From Antechinus flavipes (lineage: Eukaryota), in assembly GCF_016432865.1 (NCBI RefSeq), contig NC_067400.1, forward strand, positions 580,816,001 through 580,880,000: 64,000 nucleotides of DNA, given 5' to 3'. Shown here in pieces: positions 42,321 through 62,889 of this stretch. Made by a program: the position numbers and the translations under genes. Every line of letters begins with the position of its first letter. The first letter of the stretch is position 1. The notes under the pieces are model-generated. The model made no database searches. It was not told where the DNA came from and was given only the letters and a program-made list of their open reading frames with translations.

Positions 42321-44164
42321 TACGCTCCGTCCTCTAAGGGACACCCGCCCCGACTCCCACCCCGCCCCCAGCTCCCGAGGCAGCGAGCTCTAAGTCAGGC
42401 TTGGCTTTGGGAGTCAAAGGCAACTGCGTCAGCCTTCCCGCCGGACAGGAGCCACCTGCTCAGGCTCACGTCAACGAACTTTTGCCACCCCTTCGCTTAG
42501 CAGCTCAGTGGTATGGCCTGGTCCATTCATTTCCTCCATACACCCCACCCAAAAGGACGCGATTCTTCCTTCCCCGCTTGCTGCTGTACAATGGTACAGT
42601 CTGCTCTCTCCTCGCCAGCCCCTCTTCGGAAGCGCATCACGCAGGCGCCTTAGAGCCGTCTGGTTCCTTTTTGACCTCCTTCCGTCTCCATAGTCCGAGC
42701 CTCGGTGACACGTTTCCATGGGGCCTTAGGTAGCGTGTGCCGAAGGGGGCGTGGAAGGGGGCGTGACCGAGATCTTTAAAGGGGACGCGCGTAGAGTGGC
42801 CCTGGATCTCAGCCGACCTGGCGCTGGACCCCGCTCTCCCAATCTGTGAGCCAAGAAGGCAAGCCCCCTGCTGAGCAGGTACGGGGACTGCGGGCGGGGT
42901 TAGAGGGGCCCGGGCTCGCCGAGCGGAGCGGATGGAAGGGAGGAGTAGCCCAGCCCCGGAGGTGGATCTCAACTAGAGGATGGGTGGGAGTCCGGAGAGT
43001 GAGAGACAAGGCGAGGGTGACGATCGATACTCATCATCACCCAGTCGGGAAGGAGACTCCTCGTAAAGGGGCGCTTCGCAAATGTTGCTCCGGGATTATC
43101 CCCACAGCAGCCCTGCGAAGTAGTCGGTGCTATTATTCCCATTTTGCAGTTGATGAAACTGAGGCAAACTGGTCAAATGACTTGGCTAAGGTCAGCCGGT
43201 TAGCTCCAGCCATTGGCGTTCAGGTCTATCCGGGCTGCACCATCCACCGCCTCTGAACAGTGAGGATGGGCTGAGCGCTCTCGGTGGGAAAGAGGGAGCT
43301 AAGACTGGGAGGGAGGGAGTCCTCGAGGAGGGGCAGCCTGCGGGGAGCGGAGCTCCACGGCTGGGCCGGGGCCCCGCATCCTCGGACCCGGGCGGGGACG
43401 GATAGCTGCCCCTTCCCTAATCTCTCGTCCCACCCCGGGAAAGAAGAGCCGACGCCACAGGTGGGGGCGGGGGCCGGATCCCGGGGTGTTTGTGCTTGGC
43501 GGGGCACTGTGTTGGGCCAAAGTCCCTGAGGGTAGAGGCCAGCTGTGTGAGGAGGGGGAGAGGGAGGCATGGGGGCCAGTGGGGAGAGGGCCCAGAGTTG
43601 GCCGGAGCCCCGTGCACACGCTCCTTTTCCCTCGCTTGGGCCTCACACCCCTTCATTCATTGGGAAGCCCCGCCAGACGCGAGCCGGACCGGGCTGACTC
43701 CCCCGGCCCGGGGAGGGGTCTCTCCGGCCAATAGCAGCTCCGCCCTCCTTCGGCTCCTCCCCAGGCTGGCCCTGGTTCTGTTCCGAGAGACCCTTTGCCC
43801 TTCTTTGGGTCCTGGGCACGTTGGGAGCCTCTGTCCCCTCCCCCCCATCCCTGCCCCTTCGGGGCAGTTGAAGACGCCCCTTAGTGCGGGGCAGGGAGTG
43901 GGGGAGGGGCCCCTGGGCAAAAGGGGCGGGGCGCGGAGTTCCGCGAAACCTGAATGCATTCCTCCTTCCTCTTCCCTTGGCGGGGAGGAACCTCCCTACC
44001 TGCCCGCTTGGCAGGGGCCGAGCCACGTCCGCAGCCCGAGCCCGCTCTGGGAGGGACAGCTGGGAGGGAGGGGGGGCCCGGAGGTCTCCCAGGAACAGCT
44101 CGGGGGGAGGGGAGGTGACCCCGCGCAGCACGGGGGCTGGAGGCTCTGCACCTTGTTCCAGACG

Positions 44165-46447
<2,283 letters not shown>

Positions 46448-46829
46448 CGGGCCACTGAGGGTCGTGGGAAACGATGGACCGCCCCCACCTGAGCTTTCAC
46501 CTGGCCTTATTACATCTCTGGCCTCCTGAGGACCAAGGGAAGGAGGGAGGGGCACCAAATGCCCACCTCAGAGCCCACCTAGCTCCTCCCTGGAGGCCAC
46601 GCCTGCCAGGGAGGGCACGGGAGCCAGGGAGGGCTCACCTTCCTACCTCACCCCCACCCAGGGGACCTCCTTCCTCCAGGGAGCTGAAAGTGCCCATCTC
46701 CTGCCCACCAGGACCAGGCCCATCCAAGAGGAGCCCTCATGGTCCCCAAAGCATGGGGGAGAGGGAGGTGGGTGGGTACAGACCCAGCCCCCTCCCCAAA
46801 TCATTTCAAGTCTTGTAATCGGGTCGGCA

Positions 46830-46835
46830 AATAAA
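46830..46835 (+). terminator. Polyadenylation signal of GALE
   Basis: AATAAA followed by the T/GT-rich element gtttcttacactttgtctct. Confidence 0.75.
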
Positions 46836-46975
46836 AGTTTCTTACACTTTGTCTCTGGGCCTTGGTACCGGGGAGAAGGCCAGGAAGCCGGACAGGAAGC
46901 CGGACCACTCTATGGTTCTGAATTCCCCCTTCTCCTCCCCCCCACAAAACTCAGAGCAAGAAGCCAGGTGGAAGG

Positions 46976-46981
46976 TTTATT
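46976..46981 (-). terminator. Polyadenylation signal of LYPLA2
   Basis: TTTATT on + (AATAAA on -), about 0.9 kb downstream of the LYPLA2 stop. Confidence 0.7.
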
Positions 46982-47888
46982 TTTCTTTAATCTGGATGAC
47001 TTGGAGACACATAACAAGAAACGAAAAACGCCCAAAACCACATGGAGGAGGAGGAAGATGAGCCCCTTTTGGGCCCAGAACCTGAGCCCCAGCCCCCTCC
47101 CAACAGGCCAAGAAGGGCCACCCAACGGGATGTCTGAGCAGAGGTCCATGGGCCCCAGGCCTGCGGGCTGGAGCAGATACCATCAGGGGATGTGGGGGGG
47201 AAGAAACCCCTGCCCAGGCGCACCTGCCCTCTCCCCACCCCCACCCCCAAGACCTGGGCCCCAGCCCCTCCCCAGCAGGGAGGGGCACAGCAGCAAGAGG
47301 GGCCTGACCCAGAGGAGGCGCATTGTCAGCAGAAAAAATAAGAGACATTCATGATGAGGGCCAGGGGACAGGAGTGCGGCAGAAAACACATGATTATCTG
47401 ATTGAGGAAGGGGGGACCCAGCTCTCCCTGCAGCAGGAGGATGGGGGGAGTGGGTGTATGAGTGGGGGCGCCCGCAGGCCCCCCCTGCCCAAACACTGAG
47501 GTCACCTGGGGGGAAGATCAGGAGAGGGGTACACCCAGAAGCTGGACCCGTGAGGTACATACAGGTCCTGAGTGGGTCAGCGGCTGGGCCCCCATGCACC
47601 CCTAGCAATACTGTGGCCCTGGGGGACTGGAGATCTGGAGGACAGACTATGGCAGCTGAGATCCCGAGCCTCCCAGGAGAGGGGAGGCTGCACCTTTGAT
47701 CCCCCACCTCTCAGGACAGTGATGAGACAGGGAAAGAGGGATGGGAACAGGAGCTAGGAAAGCAATGATCTCCAAGGGGGAGGGACCCAGTCCTGGGGTG
47801 GGGGAGGGGGCTGCCATGGCTTCCACTTCATGTTCAGAGATCAGATCCTGCTGTGGGCCCCCCCAGCCCCACCTGGGGGAGGATCCTG

Positions 47889-51169
<3,281 letters not shown>

Positions 51170-51583
51170 TTAGGTTCTCTGCACTGCCGGTGGCAGGGTC
51201 CGTGTCTTTCTCCCCCCATGGGTTCTGCTGCCGGATTTTAGGTTAGGTAAAGGTGGAGGGCCCGAATCCTGGGCATTGTGGTCTGGACTCCTGCCTCTGC
51301 CCCTCTCTGTGTCCTTGCCCCATGCTTTCTCTGGGGCCTGGGACCTCTGACATCGTCTGGCTACTGTGAGGGAGCCAGGGGGCATGGCACAGGAGAGGAG
51401 AGATGGCACTTTCTCCCAAAGCCAGGGCAACAGGGCCTCTCCCCTCTGACACAGGCCGAGCTGGGTGGCCCTCCTGGGCAGGGTCAGTCCGGGCACAGGG
51501 GTGGCCACAACAGGAGCCAGGGCTTGGGCTTGGGGACCAGGAGGCCCTGGATCCCTGACCTTTTAGGCCCAAACTGCCCAGAG

Positions 51584-51771
51584 CAGGGGCCCTCAAACTT
51601 TTAAACTAGGGGCCAGTTCACTGCCCCTCAGACTGTGGGAGGCCAGACTATAGTAAAAACAAAGACTTTGTTCTGTGGGCCTTTAAATAAAGAAACTTCC
51701 TAGCCCTGGGGGAGGGGGATAATCGTCCTCAGCTGCTGCATCTGGCCCGGGCAGTAGTTTGAGGACCCCTG
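51584..51771 (-). mobile_element. Non-autonomous hAT element (OC1/OposCharlie1-like MITE), 188 bp
   Basis: 16-bp TIRs CAGGGGCCCTCAAACT / AGTTTGAGGACCCCTG (15/16 match). Perfect 8-bp TSD GCCCAGAG (51576-51583 / 51772-51779). Confidence 0.92.
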
Positions 51772-52484
51772 GCCCAGAGCCTGCCCTTTTTCTCCCTCCC
51801 ATCCCTGTCCTCACAGACCACTTTCTCTTCCTCCTTGCTCTGGCCCACCCAGACAAGAGGAAGGCCAGGAAGAGAAGTTCCTGGGGACGCTTCCCGTTCT
51901 GCCCCTGCCCAGCGGCCACTGGCCTGGTGGACATTCAGTTGGGCTACCCCCCAGACACCCACCCTGGGTCTTGTTTGGCATGTCACCCCCATGACCACCC
52001 CATGCTCCACGGCGTCTCCTGGGCTTCCCTTACATGGTCATGTGGCCTGATCCATAGCCCCTTCTCTGCCATCTCCCCCGCAGGCACTTCCCTCCCTTGC
52101 CCACTGCCTTCTCCATTCTGGCACACTCCATAGAGAGATGCTTGGAAGTTTGCACAGTAGGATGTCCTCTCCCCCAAACTCCAAACAGCCATCCCCATTC
52201 CTACAAAGACCATCCCCCCAAAGGGGCTCTTCTCAAGGAACACGCTGAGATATCCCACCCGCCTCCTTCCACTAGGACCCCTGCAAAGACACTTCCCATC
52301 CAGGCCTCTCAAGGCCCTCCAGTGAGACCTCCCACCCCTGGCTCTCCCTCCTTATTTAGACCTCCCCAAAAGGGCTCCTTTCTCTAGAACTCTCCACAAT
52401 GGAAATCCCATTCAGAGCTTTCGGTGACTGTCTCCATTTCTGCACTTCCCATTTAGGGCTTCCTCCTCCTCCCTTTCCCACCCC

Positions 52485-53240
52485 CCACAATGGGCCATCT
52501 CCCCCAGGGCACCCCTCAGCTCCCCATCCCTAAGATGGGAATTGTCGCTTCTGTTCTCCCATTTCTATACAATGGGACATCCACCTCATGGAATCCCTAC
52601 TGCTTTCCCCTAGTGGGGGATCCCACCCGGGACAGCTCTGCAACTTCCCATTCCTAAAATGGGATTTCTCACTGCTGTCCTCCCACTTCTTCCCAATGGG
52701 ACATCCACCTCATGGAATCCCTACTCCACACCCCAATGGGGCATCCCACCCATGGCAGCCTTCCTGGTCTCTCCTTCCTACAATGGGACATCCCACTCCC
52801 AACCTCTTTCCTATTCCCCCATCCCACAATGGGACAGCCCAACTAATACATTTCCTGCTCTCCCCATCCCCCAATGGGAAATCCCAGCCAGGATATCCTC
52901 CTGCTCCCCCCACCCCCAATGGGACATCCCACCTAGGGCATCCCTCGGCTCTCCCTGCCCCACAATGGGGCATCCCAGACAAGGCATCCCTCCTCCCTCC
53001 ATCCCCCAGTGGGACATCCCAGCCAGGGCATCTCTTCAGCTCCCCCCACCCTACACTGGACATCCCACCTCGGGCATCCCTCCTCTCATAATGGGACATT
53101 CCACCCAGGCATCCCTCCATCCCATGGCACATCTCACCTCCGGCATCCCACCTGCTCCCCGACTCCACAGTGGGACATCCCACCCAGCGCATCCTTCCTG
53201 CCCCCTCCCCTCCGGCAGCCTCACAATGAGACGTTCCATG
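52485..53240. repeat. Degenerate C-rich minisatellite (core CCCAATGGGACATCCCAC, about 40-50 bp spacing) in LYPLA2 intron 1
   Basis: At least 15 recognisable core variants, e.g. at 52570, 52693, 52731, 52781, 52826, 52871, 52915, 52961, 53005, 53088 and 53166. Confidence 0.9.
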
Positions 53241-54260
53241 TCTGGCCCCGGGGTCCCGCACAATGGCGCACCGCGCGCCCGCACTCTCTCGTAGGTGCCT
53301 CGGGAGCCCCCACTAGGGGACCTCCCGCCTCGTTCGTTCCTCCTGTTGGCTGGCCTCCGTCCCTTACCTCTGGGCCGGATCCCTCGAAATGGTCTCGCCC
53401 GCCCCCCAGCCCCTACGCACCCCTCCAATCTCCCGGACAATGGTACCTCCGCCGCGCCCAGCTCCCGGGGGTTCCAATCCGTCCTGAGCGACTCACCTCT
53501 TTCTCTGGCTCGGATACTCACAGAGCTCCCCACCCCCCCATCCCAGCCCCTCCCCCTCCCGCTGCCCCCGCCGGAACTTCCGCTTGGGGCGAGAGAACCC
53601 AGCCACGCGCTACCGGAAGTGGCGTGCGCCGCGCGGGATGGAACCCGGAAACTGGACTGGGGGATGCAGCCGAGGTCCGCTTCTGCAGATGTGAGGTCAC
53701 GGAGATGGGCAGCAGAGCCCCTCTTTTCGGAAGGACCTGTCCTGGCTGAGCGGCCCAGATCCAGGACGATCGCAGTGAGGAGGGCGAGCTGTGACCCCCG
53801 CAGGCGCTCACTCCGAACTTGGAAAGCCGACGTCGCCCGGCGGTTCGCGCCTCTGCCTGGGACCCTCCGGGCTGTCCTATTCACGCTCTCACCTGGCTCC
53901 CGGTAGCCGACTTGGCCCAGAGGCGGCCCGAGTGGACAGTTGAGGCTGCTTGGCCTGTAAGACCCAGGCCGGTATCTCCGGGCTGCACTTTATAAAAACC
54001 TCGAAGGCCCCTCGTTTTAAAGTGCTTATAATTCTCCACCAGCCAGCCGGCCCCCTATTAAGAGCCACGCCGGAGAAGAGAAGTTCCTAGAGGGTTCAGC
54101 TCTTGGCTGCCATAAAGGTCCCTGAGGAAAACCGGGGTCCGGAAACAGCACCTTGGCACAAGGACCCAGCCGAGGAGCAGACAGTGACTCACTCTTCCCC
54201 ACCGCCCCAAAGGCATCCTCCCACCTGAATCGCGTCGAAGCTTTCCTTTGAACTACCGGA
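53190..54260 (-). promoter_or_regulatory. LYPLA2 CpG-island promoter and non-coding exon 1 (about 53497-53590)
   Basis: ETS/GABPA motifs ACCGGAAGT (53612-53620) and CCGGAACTTCCG (53571-53582). Candidate minus-strand donors GTGAGT at 53496 and 53521. Acceptor of exon 2 at 51108-51109. Confidence 0.7.
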
Positions 54261-55708
54261 GCTGTGCCTTTGATCTAAAGCCTCAGGTGGCATTGATCCC
54301 TCAGGCCAGAAGGCAGGTTCTTTTGGGCTCGAGTGCTTAATGGGTGCCTAGGAACCCCAGTACTAAGTCTGAGCGACCCCTGGTGATGGAGGTGAAAGAG
54401 AAAAGGGAACGATAAAGAGAAGTGGACGGTCTCTGGGTAAAGCCCCAGTCGTCCCCCTAGGCCAGGGATAGGTCCCCAAGGGACTTGGAAATCTCCTTCC
54501 CCGAAATAGCCCCTGATAACCATGTTAGCTCTGGGAAGCTAATAATGCAATTCTTCCCATGCTCATATATTATATAGTGATCCTGTAGTAATTATAAACC
54601 ACACCATCCTGAAGTCAGCAAGTTTGGCAACTTGAGGTTACCTTAGGATAATATCTAGTAGTGTGATAAAGTAGGGTTTTTTTTTCTGTGTTTCAGGATC
54701 TCAAATTGAATACTTATCCTTCCTTCATAGGGTTAATCACCATGGAATGTCTTGTTTCTCATCTCCAACTTACTTTACGGTACTGATAAAAATACTGTGG
54801 TTGGAGATTGGGATGATTATACCTCAAGCAAGTATCCAATTTACTCTGGATGTCAGTTTACTTATAAGCCACATTCAATCCCTGAAACTGGCCTTTTTTA
54901 AGCATTTGTTTACTTTTCCTCATTTCTGGTACTGATGTTTACAATAGGACCATATTTAATTCCCCCCAAGTCTTAAATGCTCATTTCTGTGTGACAGCTG
55001 TTTGCTCTTCAAGAAATATAGAACTAGGTTAACAGCAACCTCCAAAATTATCTGCACAGGTGCATAGTGTTAAAGAATAGCTTAAGTTATTTCCCTTAAA
55101 TCTGTGATCTTACCATCCTCTTTAAGTTTGATACAGACTGGAAAAGGACAATTCAGCACATGCAGATTTTTATTTCCATGTGAGTAGGCATGATTTCAAG
55201 AAATGAAGAAAAACTTTCAAGCTCAATACCTGAAGATGAACCAAGGAACTAAATTTACTGTCATCTCTCATGAGCTGAGAGTAGAACTTCCAAAAAGATT
55301 CTTGGGTCACAGTCAGCATTTTGTATAGTGAGAAGATTCAGTCTTCAAGTAATGACTGGCTCTGCCATTGTGCAAGTCAGCTTAACTGAACTTCAGCCCC
55401 CTCATCTTCTTTGCACAAAGCAGCATTCTCTGCAGTTTGCAAAGAATCTGCTTTTGAATTTTGGATTGTGTGATCTTGGGCAAGGCATTTTAACTCTGAG
55501 CTGCAGTATACCCAGATATAAAATGAGACAGTTGGACTAGGTTATTTCTAAGGTAATATACAAATTTTGATTCCTGTGTGTTCAATTTCTCTTTTCAAAA
55601 GGCTTTTTTGAGGAAAATGTTTTGTGAACTGCAAAATATTCTGAGAGGGAATTACTATTAATATGAATGGTGAAAAACACACACAACAAACGTTATATCT
55701 GATGTGGA

Positions 55709-55714
55709 TTTATT
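55709..55714 (-). terminator. Polyadenylation signal of PITHD1
   Basis: TTTATT on + (AATAAA on -), about 0.8 kb downstream of the PITHD1 stop. Confidence 0.65.
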
Positions 55715-56503
55715 AGGAAGCTTCTTAGTCACAAGGAATAGAACACTGTGCACAGAAGAGCTCAAAGATTTCTGGTTTCTAAGAAGCATTAAGCATCATG
55801 CCATAAACAACGCTTTTCCTAAGTCTCAATGTCACCACCAAAATGGCCATACCAATGTGAACAATTTCAGCTACACCATCCCTCAGGTTGGTTACCAAAG
55901 GCAGGAAGAAAGGGTGCAAAGCTATAAATGTGATCAAGAGACTAGCTCTACAGTCACAATCTCAGAATACTTCAAGAGGGGGTAGCAGCTACCTGGTAGA
56001 CCTGAGTGGCTTAACCACAACAAACACAAAATACTTCACACAAACAGGAGGGAGGGAGCAAGCAGGGAAAAGTATTTCAAGATGGGAGATCTTAGCGGCA
56101 AATGTCATGAACAAAAATCTCAAGATCTTGGAATGCTACAGGCCACCTAGCAGTGGTAATTACTGATTTTTAAAAAGGTCACACGAAAGTCCTGCCACAA
56201 AGGGATAAAAACACTTAAGAGTTCACAGGCACATCCAAACTGGGAAACAAGGGCTATCCATGACTGCCAGATTTCCAATGGGCTCAAGACCCAATTTCTA
56301 CAGTGCCCAAAATGCCAAACTGTCCTCAACAATCCAGTGGCCCTCACCAATGGTTTGATATTCTCAGTTTTCAGGTCCCCAACAACAAAGCTTTGGGGGA
56401 AACTGCAATAGCCATATCTCTCAAACCCCATCTTTTTCCTTCCAAAATGGTTGTCTGACATCATTGCTGACAAAAAAGCTTCTGTGGTAGCCCCAGCTTG
56501 CCT

Positions 56504-59500
56504 TTAAGAAATGAAGTGCGTCTGTGGGGTGACCTGTTGGACCTTGTGATCTGCTGGATTAGCTGATGCTTCATAATTGCAGATAGTCACCTCATGTCGA
56601 CGCATCTTAAGAAAAAGCAAGAAAAGTTGAATTAGCCAACTGGCCATTAAAATACTGCTCTACATATTACACACTAGTAGTTTTCTTCAGTCCTTTTTTT
56701 TGGAATACAATGCTTATAATCACCCAGTATCCATCACCCTCAGTTACTTTTCAACCTGCAAAGTAGCATTACTTTTACAAGTTAAATACTAGGTTTTTTC
56801 ACCCCATTACAACTTGACCTAACTTTTGAAGCAGTGGTATGTAGTGGTTGAAGCACTGGCCTTGGAAACCTGTGTTCAGTTCTATCACATACCCTTTGGA
56901 CCTTTCTCTGGGTCTCAATGGAATAGATTTTCTCCATGACGTAAGTCATTTTACATTCTAACCTGTGTTATAAGGCTCTTTTCAGCTACAATAATCCATA
57001 GCAGATAGTACACCCCCATAACAACTAAAATTAAGCATGGCATATCAAACTGCTAAGATAATTTTTCCATGAAGAACCCATGAAGAAAAGAGGGTAACAT
57101 GGGAGAATGCATTTTACTTATTTGTCTTCCTTTTATTAGATTCCTCCCACTGTAATAAGAATGTTACTTCATTTGTTTTATATTTCTTACCTCAGTCCAC
57201 TCTCCTCTCAGTCCAATATAAAACACCTTTGTGGTGTCAGCGCCGAAGTTTTTTGAAATATGAATAGAGAGATGACACACATTTGAAAAACGAGAAATTC
57301 TGTTAAGAATGGAAGCAAGAAGGAAAAATAGACTGTTAGAATATGATGATAGCTAACCCCCCACTCATCAATCTCATTTCAGAAACATCCAATTTTTGTT
57401 TAAAATCACAAACTAGCCAGATGTCAGAAAAACCATCCTGGGATTTTTATGTTTCTGCTTATCTCCTATATACCAACACATCAATGTTCCTAAGTTCTTG
57501 AGACAAGGAAGAGGAAAGACCATTTTAAAAACAACATTTACAACATTAAGGAGTAGCTGGTGACACTGGGCCTGAAAACAGTTAGTCCTGAGTTCAAATG
57601 AAGTCTCAAGACATTTCCTACCTGTGTGACTTTGGGCAAGTCACAACCATAAAGTATCAGTTTCCTTATCTGTAAAATGGATATCATAAATTACACTTAT
57701 CTCCCAGGGTTATTATGAAAATCAAATGAGATAACTACAAATCAATTAGCAGTGCTCAGCAAAAAAGTGCTATAATAAAACAAGGCAATTCTAAAACAAG
57801 CTTAGCTTGGGCCCTCGGGTATAAGAAATTTGGGATGCAAAAAGTCCCTTTACACCTCAGCTCTGTTCCTTCTGGGTGGTCCATCTGCTTCTCTGGGCTT
57901 CTGAAGGGTCTGACCTAACCTGGATAACTCTAAGGTCTCTTTTAGCTCCAAATTCTATTATTTTTTTCTTTTCCCAAATCCTATGATTCTACAAGGAAGG
58001 AAAAGAGGAGCCTATGCTACCAGCCTTTTCCCTCACAAAACCATCTTTTCTTACAATTTCCCACAATGGCATTGTTCATGCAAGAGTTAACAAGTCTGGC
58101 TTCTCACATCAGAAGTGGGTAAAAATCGATCCAAGCAATAGCTTATGTAACTTCCTCCATATTTTTTAATCATTGCCTACATTAAGAAAGAAGACTAGCC
58201 AAAAACAAATTATCAGTTGCCAATAACAAATCAACATGTCTTTTGTCCCTCAAGAGATGATGCTTTTAAAAAGAAAAGGGACTTAGGGCTTACTTTGTAG
58301 CATATTCTAATTCTCCAGTGAGGTCTCGATTTAGACTAAAAGTCTGATCAGGTTCTCGGTCTGTATCATCAAAAGACATTTGTGGAATGTTTTTGAACCT
58401 AAAGAGAGACAAGAGATTCACATGACATGTTGTACAAGATTTACCAATCTTTCTGAAGCCTATCCCACTGAATCCTCAATTTTCCTCAAAAAGACACTTT
58501 CAGGAATATTAGCATTTTATTTTTTGTTTTTATAAACAAAAAAGGGAAGAAAAATGTACTTTAATGATACTATAAAGAAACCGTTTTTGTTATGTCACCA
58601 ATTTCCCAAATTATCTTAATATTAACATAAGCAAGGAACAAAGGGAAAGAAATCACAAAAGGAAATTTAATTATAGTTTCAAGAACAACATATGGGAAAA
58701 AAATCACTTTTTTATTTACTATTTGCTGAAAGATTTTAAAAATCCAACTAACCGGATGTACCTCAAGCTATAACCTTATAAATGTAAAATGTGACCAAGA
58801 AGGAAAAGATTCTTTTTTTAAACTTAAAAGACCTGAAGTTGCCAATATGATATGTGGTGTATTTTACTTGGGATGATCATAAGGGATCGTGGAAAAACAG
58901 TGGATACCAAATTCAGAGACTGTCAATACTGTGAGTTCACTTGTAAGGAAAGTGGCACAAACCCATGTAAAGAAGTTTTACAGATAAGCTTAAGGAATTC
59001 AAAATTCAAATAATGCGTGGCTCCAAAGAAACCAGCTCAGCATATCAATCCAGCTTACAATTATGATAAAGAGGATTCAAGATTCTGCCCTGAAGAAGTG
59101 TTATCAGCCAAAACACTATTATAAGCATGCATGCCAAATGTTCAGAGAATTTACACCAAGAATAAATGTCAATAACTTTACCATAAGATCTTAAGGATGT
59201 AGCCATGAGAAATGATCATTTTAATGTAGTTTTTAACTCACTTTATAGCATGAAAAATTCTATCAACAAACTGCAATCTAGCACCTTTAGCATAGTTCAC
59301 AAAACTTGAACACATTTCAGCAAATAGTGCTAGGACATTTTAAAACAGAAACAAACACTTATCAGGTTTGTTGTACAATTCTTAAGATTTGTCCCACCCA
59401 TTTTCCAACTAAACAAATATCCTGATTATCTATCTCAAATGGACCACACACTCTTAAAGCAATAGGGATAGTTAAATGGCAAATTCAAACTTCTAAGACA

Positions 59501-60494: not shown

Positions 60495-62889
60495 ACTAAA
60501 GGAGCTCTGTTATCTGAGGAAGGTAATTCAGACCAATAACAAAAAGTCTACTACCCAGCAGAATCACCATGCATAAGAATACCCGAAAGGTAATTAACTG
60601 CCTCTGCAAAGTGCTATGTGCTATTTAACACTAGAGAATATTATATGTGGGACTTTGTGGTAAACTATTACCAGGATCAAAATCTTTGACCACTAAAGAG
60701 AGATACACATAACTAGACATTTTTGGGTCTTTGGTCTTTGCTACTTACAGTCTCATCTCTGATGGATGCGAGTCATCTTCACCTCCCATAATGATGATTC
60801 CTTTCAGTTTAACATTACCTGTAAACCTGCCCAAACACAGAAGACAAGCTGGGAGTCAGAAAGCTGGAGGGTCATGTTAGGCCAGCTTCTTACTGTCTAT
60901 ATGACCTTGGTTATCACTTCCCTTCTCTGGGCCTCCATATCCTCCTTTGTAAAATGAGAGCCTTGGACTTGATGGTCTCTAAAGGTTCCTTCCAACTCTT
61001 AATGGCTGATGATTCTAAGGATATTCATTTGAACTTTATCTTCTTTATTGGGAATGAATACCTCACTCACAGTAGAGTGCCACAGAAAGAACACAGGAAG
61101 ACTTCGGTGGGTTTTTTTTTTTTTTTTGTTTTGGGTCTAAATTCTCCCAAACTTTAAAATGGGGAAAAATATTTCTGTTACCTTACCTCACAGTAGTTTG
61201 TGAGGACTGAAGGAAGATGTAACATGTTAAAAAGTATGAATTACCATCTCCAAGGAAAGCGATTATCCTCCCCACCCCTTTCCAAAATAGATGTTATGCT
61301 GAGCAAAGAAGCCACCAGGCAAGCTGACCAGACTTAGTGCTTACTAAAACAAGGAAGCCTAAGGTACCTATTAGAAGGGTACTCACGGAATATTAAACAG
61401 CAACTCTTCATCAGCATCACTTTCTACAAACTGGGAAAAAACAACAACCCACAGATCATTAACACCTCTGGGTGTTCACTTCTCTTCTGAAAGTCAAGTT
61501 TAATGCAGTTACTTGCTTGCACATGCTCTCCTGTGTGTATCTGTGTCCCAGCCACAACATGCAGTTTGCTTTTGCTTGCCTCAATTTGGAGAAGCATGGC
61601 CTAGGACTTCACTAGTACTGAATCTAAGGGGTTCCAGATTAATTCTAGAGCTCCATTCTGGCTTTCCAATTCTGTTGGGTTTGATAATTCAGCTGTTAGG
61701 AAAGCCAGAAATGATAATGAACTATAAAAGGTAAAAAGGATGCTGCATTGGGAACCATACCAGGCACATGAGGTAGAGCTGAAAAAGCAGCAGTGCAGGA
61801 GTCCAGATATTGTTATATTATCACTAGCCAAGGAACCTGGGGCAAACCATTTCTCCTATATGATTTTTCGTTTTCCCACTTGTAAAATGGGGATAAACCT
61901 CCAGGGATAAACACTTCCTTTCTGAGGATGTTATATAGTGCTATATATATGAAAGCAAGATAATATAATGGAGAGAAACGAACTTTGCATCACAAGTCCA
62001 AGTCATGAGAAATGTGTTGGCATTTTACAATTAAAAATGAATTTGGGCCACGGGTATCCCGTTTGATCCTCATTTTGCTTTTCTATAAAATAGAAAAGAT
62101 CAACCTTTAACTGTCCACCTAAGAGGGCTGCAGTGAGGGATTACTTGAGGGATCTCCAGAAAAAACATTTTCTGTAAATCCAGTAAGAATTGTCGAAATG
62201 ATCATGATGGGTTTGGAAGGAGCCCTAGACCTAGGGGGGGGGGAGGGGGTCATTCTCTCGAAGGGAGGGGCTAGATAAGAGCTCTCCTAAGCTCCGTTTC
62301 TGACCTGACATTCCCACAAATCACCAGTATTTCTGTCCCCAGGGCCCGGTCCCTCTCCCAGAACATAACACGAGGACCAGTGATCAACCGTTGATCCCAT
62401 GGGGTGGGGGATGGACTAGCTCACAGATTCCTTTGCAGGTCAGAAATATCCACGGGGAGCACTGAGCCCTCGCTCCCAGAGCCTGGAGCTTAGGCGTTAT
62501 AAAGTAGGGCTGGCGGGATCCTGGAAAGTGCGCTTCTCCGCGACCTCCCAAAAGACCCCCGAGACATCCTACCCGCCCCGCCCTCCGGACCCCCTCGGCC
62601 CCGCCCGCACTCGAGACTCCGCCCCCAGCACAGCCCAGAAATCTCTAGAGGGGTTGGGGGCGGCCGCAGGCCCAGTCTCGGGCCCCACCTTGGTGCGGTC
62701 GGCCCGCTCCTCCCACGGCTTGAAGACGCCGCGGCCGCTGCCCTCGCGGCTCTCGTTGAGGCACTGCAGGCGCTCCAGGTCGATGCGCAGATAGAGCCCG
62801 TAGGCCAAACCACGCTGCTCCGGCGGCTCCTCGTGCTCTGCGGCGCAGCGGCAGCCGCCGCCCCCGCCGTGACTGTGCCCGTGCGACAT
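56504..62889 (-). CDS. PITHD1: PITH domain-containing protein 1, 212 aa
   Basis: Minus-strand coding exons 62889-62689 (MSHGHSHGGGGGCRC..), 61430-61387 (FVESDADEELLFNIP), 60826-60749, 58398-58294, 57299-57191, 56605-56504 (MRRHEVTICNYEASANPADHKVQQVTPQTHFIS*). Total 639 nt, all GT-AG. Confidence 0.98.

What the first reader, a model, noticed from the sequence alone, without database searches (positions are those of the whole stretch)
52485..53240. Minisatellite-built array of nine NF-kB consensus sites in LYPLA2 (APT2) intron 1
Seen in sequence: exact GGGRNWYYCC decamers at 52615 (GGGGGATCCC), 52738 and 52967 (GGGGCATCCC), 52785, 52921, 53011 and 53172 (GGGACATCCC), 52876 (GGGAAATCCC) and 53093 (GGGACATTCC), plus several one-mismatch copies (52574, 52661, 52698, 52831). 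That is nine in about 570 bp, spaced mostly 44-90 bp and starting about 300 bp downstream of exon 1. Under uniform base composition the decamer is expected once per 16 kb per strand. The copies are not independent, since they arose by tandem expansion. The spacers have diverged heavily while the palindromic core is retained, which is what selection on the core would produce. Established: homotypic kB clusters give graded, strong induction, and APT2 depalmitoylates signalling proteins, including STAT3 in the reported ZDHHC7-APT2 cycle. Inference: this is a repeat-derived, possibly lineage-specific and length-polymorphic inflammatory enhancer that wires depalmitoylation to NF-kB. Other GGGA/TCCC binders (RBPJ, Ikaros, HIVEP or other zinc fingers) or G-quadruplex formation on the G-rich strand are alternatives.
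Basis: partly seen in the sequence, partly recalled or inferred. Interest (0 to 1): 0.72.

Follow-up and report, generated by a model that had tools for sequence, protein, structure and literature searches.

The report
Old marsupial minisatellite in LYPLA2 intron
The nine NF-kB-like sites are real, but they are copies of one roughly 45-base repeat unit in the first intron of the marsupial LYPLA2 gene. That repeat mutates faster than the DNA beside it, so it looks like an old ordinary minisatellite rather than a proven inflammatory switch.

Summary
Observation confirmed. Nine exact GGGRNWYYCC decamers lie on the + strand at the stated coordinates. They sit inside a degenerate 45-bp-period tandem array (about 52398-53275), 220-1100 nt into the inferred intron 1 of LYPLA2 (minus strand). 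The window is Antechinus flavipes.

The array is also present at the same place in Sminthopsis, Sarcophilus and Dromiciops (6-9 consensus hits each). It is absent from dugong and manatee. It is therefore old and marsupial-specific as far as sampled.

The evidence leans against selection for NF-kB sites:
- The block that recurs in all four marsupial species is 22 nt (CCCACAATGGGACATCCCACCC), not the decamer.
- Only 3 of 9 sites fit the consensus in every sequence.
- On the Antechinus branch, decamers and spacers change at the same rate (0.055 per site), 2.2 times faster than the unique intron (0.025).
- Within decamers only the G and C positions are kept.
- A neutral-decay simulation predicts 5-7 surviving sites, against 6-9 seen.

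Sirenians lack the array but keep the same strong G skew on the sense strand of intron 1.

Best reading: a neutral or nearly neutral birth-and-death minisatellite in a GC-skewed promoter-proximal intron. NF-kB binding is untested and not excluded. The scan noted a similar case before on other DNA of this genome: a DHDH intron minisatellite with CTCF-like motifs.

The parts
52398..53275 (.). Degenerate minisatellite of about 20 units of 33-56 bp (modal 45 bp). Unit on the + strand: CACAATGGGACATCCCACC + (A/G)GGGCATCCCTC + a C-rich tail. The best-preserved part is 52485-53240.
   Evidence: TRF periods 45/90/124/136. Fuzzy core search. Unit alignment. Same array at the same place in L004, L001/L005 and L006.
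52615..53181 (+). Span holding the nine exact GGGRNWYYCC decamers (52615, 52738, 52785, 52876, 52921, 52967, 53011, 53093, 53172). Only 52785, 52921 and 52967 fit the consensus in all five marsupial sequences.
52100..52397 (.). C-skewed flank with decayed unit-like remnants (for example AGTGAGACCTCCCA at 52321). Probably older, eroded units; this is inference.
   Evidence: GC skew -0.41 to -0.46. Fuzzy hit. 81-88% identity between dasyurids.
53225..53455 (.). Promoter-proximal, CpG-rich unit-like elements: CACAATGAGACGTTCC at 53225, CACAATGGCGCACC at 53258 and GACAATGGTACCTCC at about 53437. The GGTACCTCC part is conserved as far as sirenians. This may be the seed from which the array grew; that is inference.
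51108..53496 (-). Inferred intron 1 of LYPLA2 (2389 nt; an alternative donor would place its start at 53521). The sense strand is G-rich over the first 1.4 kb or so (skew +0.3 to +0.5).
   Evidence: Acceptor TATCCAG|G at 51108/51107, and donors GAG|GTGAGT and CT|GTGAGT. The 26-nt donor marker is identical in all five marsupial loci. Skew profile. No RNA evidence.
53497..53650 (-). Inferred non-coding exon 1 and core promoter of LYPLA2, with two ETS-type sites (GGAACTTCCGC at 53573, CCGGAAGT at 53613). The TSS is not mapped.
   Evidence: 79-80% identity to dugong and manatee over 53551-53650. Alignment A1 has invariant CGGAAGTTCCGGCGGGGGC and ACTTCCGG. Positions.
51002..51107 (-). LYPLA2 exon 2, with the start codon at 51079 ([26 protein letters not shown]).
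   Evidence: translation; splice sites. The annotated CDS end in L003, 16915, maps to window 51079.

Best explanation
The feature is an old, degenerate minisatellite specific to marsupials (Australidelphia at least). It lies in the promoter-proximal, GC-skewed part of LYPLA2 intron 1.

A unit of about 45 bp was amplified before dasyurids and Dromiciops split. Its centre is the near-palindrome TGGGACATCCCA. Since then units have been duplicated, deleted and mutated (birth and death by slippage or unequal exchange). In the Sarcophilus lineage there is also a strong AT-to-GC substitution bias. The decamer GGGACATCCC happens to satisfy the loose kB consensus, so every reasonably preserved unit scores as an 'NF-kB site'.

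Shown here: the array, its age, its turnover, its elevated substitution rate, and the lack of decamer-specific constraint. Inferred: it has no sequence-specific regulatory function. It persists because it is tolerated in an intron whose general property, G-richness of the sense strand downstream of the TSS, does not depend on the repeat.
For: - Tandem structure, with the excess of kB hits confined to the array.
- Array at the same place in Sminthopsis, Sarcophilus and Dromiciops, with shared flanking and internal units. Recent local re-duplications are also present: a 37-bp unit x3.1 at 88% in Dromiciops, and a 124-bp higher-order repeat in Antechinus.
- Site turnover: 9/6/6-9/8 hits per species but only 3 shared by all.
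- The array evolves faster than the unique intron: 78-84% against 92-94% identity between dasyurids. Branch rates are 0.055 and 0.110 against 0.025.
- On the Antechinus branch the decamer rate equals the spacer rate, even though the units were chosen in that species, which should favour the decamers.
- Only G/C positions of the decamer are retained.
- The recurrent block shared by four species is 22 nt, longer than any NF-kB footprint.
- Neutral decay predicts 5-7 surviving matches against 6-9 seen.
- Dugong and manatee lack the array yet keep the same sense-strand G skew and G-run density.
- Long positive GC skew downstream of CpG-island TSSs is a general feature of housekeeping promoters (PMC3787257).
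Against:
- Between Sminthopsis and Sarcophilus, decamers are more conserved than the rest of the unit (0.86 against 0.75, p=0.002). Their G/C positions are kept better than G/C positions of spacers (p=4e-5).
- Persistence of 6-9 copies in every marsupial sampled, across an order-level divergence, is somewhat above the simulation if only 20 ancestral units are assumed: P(9 or more)=0.04 at d=0.21.
- Alignment within repeats is uncertain, and only four species were available.
- No binding, chromatin or expression data were available.
Confidence: 0.55

Rival explanations
1. One reading: the array is an NF-kB-responsive homotypic enhancer that couples LYPLA2/APT2 transcription to inflammatory signalling.
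For: - Nine exact and ten one-mismatch consensus matches, and 51-fold enrichment over the rest of the window.
- 6-9 matches retained in each of four marsupial species.
- The GGG and CCC triplets are the best-kept positions.
- A precedent exists: the HRAS1 minisatellite binds rel/NF-kB proteins (Trepicchio and Krontiris 1992, as cited in PMC2065792).
Against: - The conserved block is 22 nt, and the flanking ACAAT is as recurrent as the decamer.
- The central A/T positions that the consensus constrains (R, W, Y) evolve as fast as spacers.
- On the Antechinus branch the decamer rate equals the spacer rate and exceeds the neutral intron rate.
- Only 3 of 9 sites are shared by all sequences.
- The second repeated motif, GGGCATCCC, is retained about as often (GG[CG]ATC[CT]C, 9 copies) but has the wrong spacing for kB.
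- Both half-sites are GGG-type. From established NF-kB structural knowledge this favours p50/p52 homodimers, which lack activation domains, over RelA-driven induction (inference).
- Eutherian orthologs lack the array.
Confidence: 0.1
2. The array is a landing pad for another sequence-specific factor with a long footprint, such as a multi-zinc-finger protein, that recognises roughly CACAATGGGACATCCCAC. This would be analogous to the ZNF410 motif clusters at CHD4.
For: - The only k-mers recurring at least 3 times in intron 1 of all four species tile a 22-nt block.
- All copies are co-oriented.
- Homotypic co-oriented clusters serving one dedicated factor are known (bioRxiv 10.1101/2024.02.24.581901).
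Against: - There is no excess conservation relative to neutral intron.
- The flanks of the block are no better kept than the spacers between species (0.68-0.88).
- The ZNF410 motif itself is absent (0-2 weak matches per species).
- No candidate factor was identified.
Confidence: 0.12
3. What matters is the composition rather than the motif. The G-rich sense strand (G triplets, GC skew) promotes R-loops or G-quadruplexes, or binds hnRNP H/F-type G-run factors on the pre-mRNA. The minisatellite is just the marsupial way of supplying G runs.
For: - Sense-strand skew of +0.3 to +0.55 and 13-23 G3+ runs per 300 bp over the first 1.2-1.5 kb of intron 1, in marsupials and also in array-less sirenians.
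- G/C positions of the core are selectively retained.
- 3-7 canonical G4 motifs on the sense strand against 0-1 on the antisense strand.
- GC skew downstream of CpG-island TSSs is linked to R-loops and the unmethylated state (PMC3787257).
Against: - The array is CpG-poor in Antechinus (1-5 CpG per 300 bp), so it lies outside the protected island.
- Such skew can also arise from transcription-associated mutation bias without any selection (established knowledge, not tested here).
- Each unit also carries C triplets that oppose the skew.
- No structural or R-loop data were available.
Confidence: 0.18

Closest known systems
HRAS1 minisatellite (28-bp VNTR 3' of human HRAS) that binds rel/NF-kB proteins
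   Same: A GC-rich minisatellite whose repeat unit carries a kB-like sequence, so the array presents many potential NF-kB sites next to a gene (PMC2065792 citing Trepicchio and Krontiris 1992).
   Different: Binding and reporter effects were shown experimentally for HRAS1, and nothing is shown here. HRAS1 has a different unit and lies 3' of the gene rather than in intron 1. The original paper was not held in the library.
Intronic VNTRs with predicted TF sites (for example the 46-bp IL1A intron repeat, hTERT VNTR 2-2)
   Same: Intronic minisatellites of similar unit size whose units contain consensus transcription-factor sites (PMC2065792).
   Different: Those are human polymorphic loci with association or reporter data. 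Here polymorphism is only suggested by the differences between two Sarcophilus assemblies.
GC-skewed Class I CpG-island promoters (R-loop zone extending into the first intron)
   Same: A sharp positive GC skew co-oriented with transcription, starting at the TSS and extending more than 700 bp into intron 1 of a broadly expressed gene (PMC3787257).
   Different: The array part is CpG-poor in Antechinus. R-loop formation and methylation state are untested. The skew is carried by a tandem repeat in marsupials and by unique sequence in sirenians.
ZNF410 homotypic motif clusters at CHD4
   Same: Many co-oriented copies of one long motif concentrated at a single gene's regulatory region.
   Different: The ZNF410 motif is not present. 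The CHD4 clusters are reported as highly conserved, whereas this array evolves faster than the flanking intron. No factor is known here.
Dasyurid DHDH intron 3 minisatellite with CTCF-like motifs
   Same: Same genome and same kind of object: an intronic minisatellite that multiplies one TF-like motif about ten times. It was judged to evolve like an ordinary minisatellite.
   Different: That case has a different unit (62 bp), motif and gene, and was described as young. The LYPLA2 array is old (shared with Dromiciops). I did not re-test that note.

Membership tests
Minisatellite / VNTR | Head-to-tail tandem units of about 10-100 bp | tested here: met
   TRF period 45 (5.9 copies, 72% matches) with higher-order periods 90/124/136. 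About 20 units aligned.
Minisatellite / VNTR | Copy-number variation between individuals | tested here: inconclusive
   Intron 1 is 2212 nt in one Sarcophilus assembly and 2363 nt in the other, and the MAFFT alignment shows the shorter assembly lacking stretches inside the array. The two assemblies also differ by 7-197 gap openings per aligned segment elsewhere.
Minisatellite / VNTR | Unit gain and loss between species | tested here: met
   Window 53051-53252 (about 200 bp) corresponds to 66 bp in Sarcophilus assembly 1. There are species-specific duplications in Dromiciops and many unit-sized gaps in the alignment.
Functional NF-kB (kB) enhancer | Match to the kB consensus GGGRNWYYCC | tested here: met
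   Nine exact matches and ten one-mismatch matches.
Functional NF-kB (kB) enhancer | Purifying selection on the sites relative to flanking or neutral sequence | tested here: not met
   Antechinus branch: decamers 0.055, spacers 0.055, unique intron 0.025 substitutions per site. A/T positions of decamers are 67-83% identical between dasyurids against 89-95% in unique intron. Only 3 of 9 sites are shared by all sequences.
Functional NF-kB (kB) enhancer | High predicted affinity by PWM or PBM (RELA, NFKB1, REL) | not tested
Functional NF-kB (kB) enhancer | Occupancy by Rel proteins and stimulus-inducible activity | not testable with these tools
   Needs ChIP or CUT&RUN, a reporter assay, and stimulated-cell RNA-seq in a marsupial.
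GC-skew (R-loop-prone) CpG-island promoter, long-skew class | Positive GC skew co-oriented with transcription from the TSS for more than 700 bp | tested here: met
   Sense-strand skew of +0.30 to +0.50 over the first 1.5 kb or so of intron 1. The same holds in four marsupials and two sirenians. Class definition from PMC3787257.
GC-skew (R-loop-prone) CpG-island promoter, long-skew class | CpG-dense, unmethylated state co-extensive with the skew; R-loop formation | tested here: inconclusive
   CpG count is 27 in the first 300 nt of the intron but only 5, 1 and 2 in the next three 300-nt bins, which hold the array. Methylation and R-loops are not testable here.
ZNF410-type homotypic cluster | Multiple copies of the ZNF410 motif with intact AA at positions 10-11 | tested here: not met
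   0-2 matches at up to 2 mismatches per species, and none at up to 1. The motif letters were recalled from memory and agree with the numbering.

The most novel reading that the evidence does not exclude
The array is a marsupial-specific regulatory innovation, shared at order level between Dasyuromorphia and Microbiotheria. It is a homotypic cluster kept in 6-9 working copies by selection at the level of the whole array, with individual sites turning over. It serves as a landing pad for p50/p52-type NF-kB dimers or for a dedicated long-footprint zinc-finger protein, and so gives LYPLA2/APT2 a mode of control that eutherians lack.
Probability: 0.12. Interest if true: 0.6.

Novelty: new member of a known kind. 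Interest (0 to 1): 0.3.

Why it matters
If the neutral reading holds, this is a worked example of a common trap. Any tandem repeat whose unit happens to satisfy a loose consensus looks like a dense 'array of binding sites', and retention of the motif can be mistaken for selection. Here the orthologous arrays allowed a direct test.

Some points still have modest interest:
- The minisatellite has stayed at one orthologous intronic position across an order-level marsupial divergence.
- It is a local substitution hot spot, with a striking AT-to-GC bias in the Tasmanian devil lineage.
- It sits in an intron whose strand skew is conserved even in mammals that lack the repeat.

If the regulatory reading were true, it would be a lineage-specific rewiring of a depalmitoylase gene to NF-kB or to a dedicated factor.

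Tried and rejected
After that I sent no DNA letters of that stretch to public-collection, paper or findings searches. Orthologs were fetched through proteins encoded outside it: PITHD1 exon 1 at 62689-62889 and the GALE exons within 43421-44707. The stretch was still analysed with local tools: TRF, alignments, folding, Rfam cmscan and scripts.
2. The PITHD1 route. The 50%-identity representatives were eutherian-like aberrant models and gave no marsupial locus. I dropped it.
3. DNA could not be fetched for Vombatus, Monodelphis, Macrotis, Trichosurus, Gracilinanus or Notamacropus because the files were too large. The origin of the array relative to didelphids and diprotodonts is therefore unknown. 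Human and mouse were not examined.
4. ZNF410 motif: rejected.
Each has at most 6 copies in the array and is enriched at most 13-fold, well below the kB pattern. None is established.
6. Rfam: no family in 46000-58000.
7. RNA folding of the sense strand gives z = -4.7 on only 20 shuffles. I attribute this to the palindromic units and do not take it as evidence of a structured RNA.
8. The original HRAS1/NF-kB paper was not held.
10. No fetched contig was taken to be human.

Full report
**Observation.** The four named one-mismatch copies are also real, and six more exist. The whole window has 24 matches against 23.2 expected, so the excess lies entirely in this stretch. Dinucleotide shuffles of 52485-53240 give 1.3 +/- 1.5 matches against 10 observed. 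The sites are not independent. Tandem Repeats Finder reports a degenerate array with period 45 and higher-order periods 90, 124 and 136, at 68-81% matches. The 14-mer AATGGGACATCCCA (up to 3 mismatches) occurs 17 times between 52489 and 53225 and essentially nowhere else in 64 kb.

**Anatomy.** About 20 units of 33-56 bp can be laid out between 52398 and 53275. Read on the + strand, the consensus is CACAATGGGACATCCCACC, then (A/G)GGGCATCCCTC, then a C-rich tail. The second motif is a one-base-shorter echo of the first. It recurs about as often (GG[CG]ATC[CT]C, 9 copies), but its GGG-to-CCC spacing does not fit kB. The + strand is strongly C-rich (GC skew -0.4 to -0.5 from 52000 to 53500).

**Gene context.**
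- LYPLA2 is on the minus strand. The start codon is at 51079 ([11 protein letters not shown]...), and the FLHGLGD and HGELDP exons lie further down.
- GALE starts at about 44165 on the + strand, so the two genes converge.
- PITHD1 exon 1 is at 62689-62889 on the minus strand.
- An acceptor (TATCCAG|G) precedes the ATG exon at 51108/51107.
- Two good donors (GAG|GTGAGT at 53496, CT|GTGAGT at 53521) lie just downstream of a CpG-rich segment with two ETS-type sites.
- The 26-nt donor segment is identical in all five marsupial loci. The ETS promoter aligns at 79-80% with dugong and manatee.

This is inference from conservation and splice motifs.

**Related sequences.** I fetched orthologous loci through GALE proteins.
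- L003 (Antechinus flavipes) is 100% identical to the window over 50900-54400, which identifies the source species.
- Sminthopsis crassicaudata, two Sarcophilus harrisii assemblies and Dromiciops gliroides (order Microbiotheria) all carry the array at the same position in intron 1. They have 6, 6 and 9, and 8 consensus matches respectively.
- Dugong and manatee have a 1.56-kb intron 1 with no tandem repeat, no copy of the core at up to 2 mismatches, and no + strand kB match.
- The array is thus old and marsupial-specific as far as I could sample. DNA for didelphids, peramelids and diprotodonts could not be fetched.

**Is the decamer under selection?** Five results bear on this.
1. An anchor-free k-mer comparison shows that the only words recurring at least 3 times in intron 1 of all four species tile the 22-nt block CCCACAATGGGACATCCCACCC. 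This is longer than an NF-kB footprint.
2. In a five-sequence alignment, only the sites at 52785, 52921 and 52967 fit the consensus everywhere. The other sites are gained and lost.
3. Between dasyurids the unique part of intron 1 is 92-94% identical, the array 78-84%, and the decamer columns 86-89%.
4. I then restricted the analysis to ungapped blocks and used Sminthopsis as outgroup.
   - Antechinus branch: 7/128 changes in decamers, 22/398 in the rest of the array, and 14/569 in unique intron. Decamers and spacers therefore evolve equally fast, 2.2 times faster than the neighbouring intron. This holds even though the units were defined in Antechinus, which should bias decamers towards looking conserved.
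   - Sarcophilus branch: the array rate is 0.110 per site with 40 W-to-S changes against 3 S-to-W. Decamers are at 0.062 and spacers at 0.126.
5. Inside decamers the G and C positions are 92-96% conserved, but the A/T positions only 67-83%, like spacers. The GGG and CCC triplets persist while three of the four central bases of the kB pattern drift.

A simple neutral-decay simulation supports the same picture. At the Antechinus-Dromiciops neutral distance (about 0.21 per lineage, from 68% identity in unique intron), 24% of GGGACATCCC copies still fit the consensus. That gives 5-7 survivors from 20-30 ancestral units, against 6-9 observed. Recent local re-duplications add fresh copies.

**What is conserved beyond marsupials.** The sense strand of the first 1.2-1.5 kb of intron 1 has GC skew of +0.3 to +0.55 and 13-23 G3+ runs per 300 nt in marsupials. 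The values are the same in dugong and manatee, which lack the array. Long positive skew downstream of CpG-island start sites is a described property of housekeeping promoters and is linked to R-loop formation (PMC3787257). In Antechinus the array itself is CpG-poor. The skew could equally be a mutational by-product of germline transcription (established knowledge, not tested here).

**Most likely explanation.** This is a birth-and-death minisatellite that arose in an ancestor of Australidelphia in a GC-skewed, promoter-proximal intron. It is tolerated there and mutates quickly. Its near-palindromic centre happens to satisfy the kB consensus. I put this at 0.55. The rivals are:
- a compositional role of the G-rich strand (0.18);
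- a long-footprint factor that recognises the 22-mer (0.12);

NF-kB cannot be excluded. Both half-sites are GGG-type, which from established structural knowledge points to p50/p52 homodimers rather than RelA-driven induction (inference).

**Comparison with the known, and novelty.** The object belongs with intronic or gene-flanking minisatellites whose units carry TF-like motifs, such as HRAS1, IL1A and hTERT. The scan noted a similar DHDH/CTCF-like case in this same genome. It is a new member of that kind. It is unusual mainly for its age and for the devil-lineage AT-to-GC burst.

**Limits.** The analysis rests on four marsupial species, repeat alignment is uncertain, and there were no reads, chromatin or binding data. 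Human and mouse introns were not examined.

Noticed in passing
window:52390-53270 versus L005 (Sarcophilus), L004: On the Sarcophilus branch the array has 58 substitutions in 526 ungapped sites, with 40 AT-to-GC against 3 GC-to-AT. The adjacent unique intron has 14 in 569 with no bias. This looks like GC-biased gene conversion at a promoter-proximal recombination hot spot, or expansion of the CpG island.
   Followed up: partly
L001 versus L005 (two Sarcophilus harrisii assemblies): The two assemblies differ by 7-197 gap openings per aligned segment (93.8-99.4% identity) over 22 kb, and by 151 bp in LYPLA2 intron 1. One of them probably carries many indel errors, so VNTR polymorphism cannot be read from this pair.
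   Followed up: partly
window:53551-53650 (minus strand); alignment A1: The LYPLA2 core promoter, with two ETS-type sites (ACTTCCGG and CGGAAGTTCCGGCGGGGGC), is invariant across four marsupials and two sirenians. A further GGAGGTACC element inside intron 1 (window about 53442-53450) is also invariant.
   Followed up: partly
protein P0011: A 288-aa database protein joins PITHD1 N-terminal exons to LYPLA2 C-terminal exons. It is a read-through or fusion gene model of the two tandem neighbours in some eutherian.
   Followed up: no
window:43421-44707 (+): A 429-codon stop-free frame runs through the GALE 5' region. It includes the first coding exon, an in-frame stop-free intron of about 37 codons, and the next exon. 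This is a GC-rich composition effect, not a longer protein.
   Followed up: partly
L006:18578-18879 (Dromiciops, LYPLA2 intron 1): A 300-bp TC-rich (TCTCTGTC-type) microsatellite-like array lies in the distal part of intron 1. It is specific to Dromiciops among the loci fetched.
   Followed up: no
window:52937-53746 (+): A 270-codon stop-free frame crosses the array and promoter. It arises because the 45-bp period is a multiple of three and the strand is C-rich. There is no evidence that it codes for anything.
   Followed up: no
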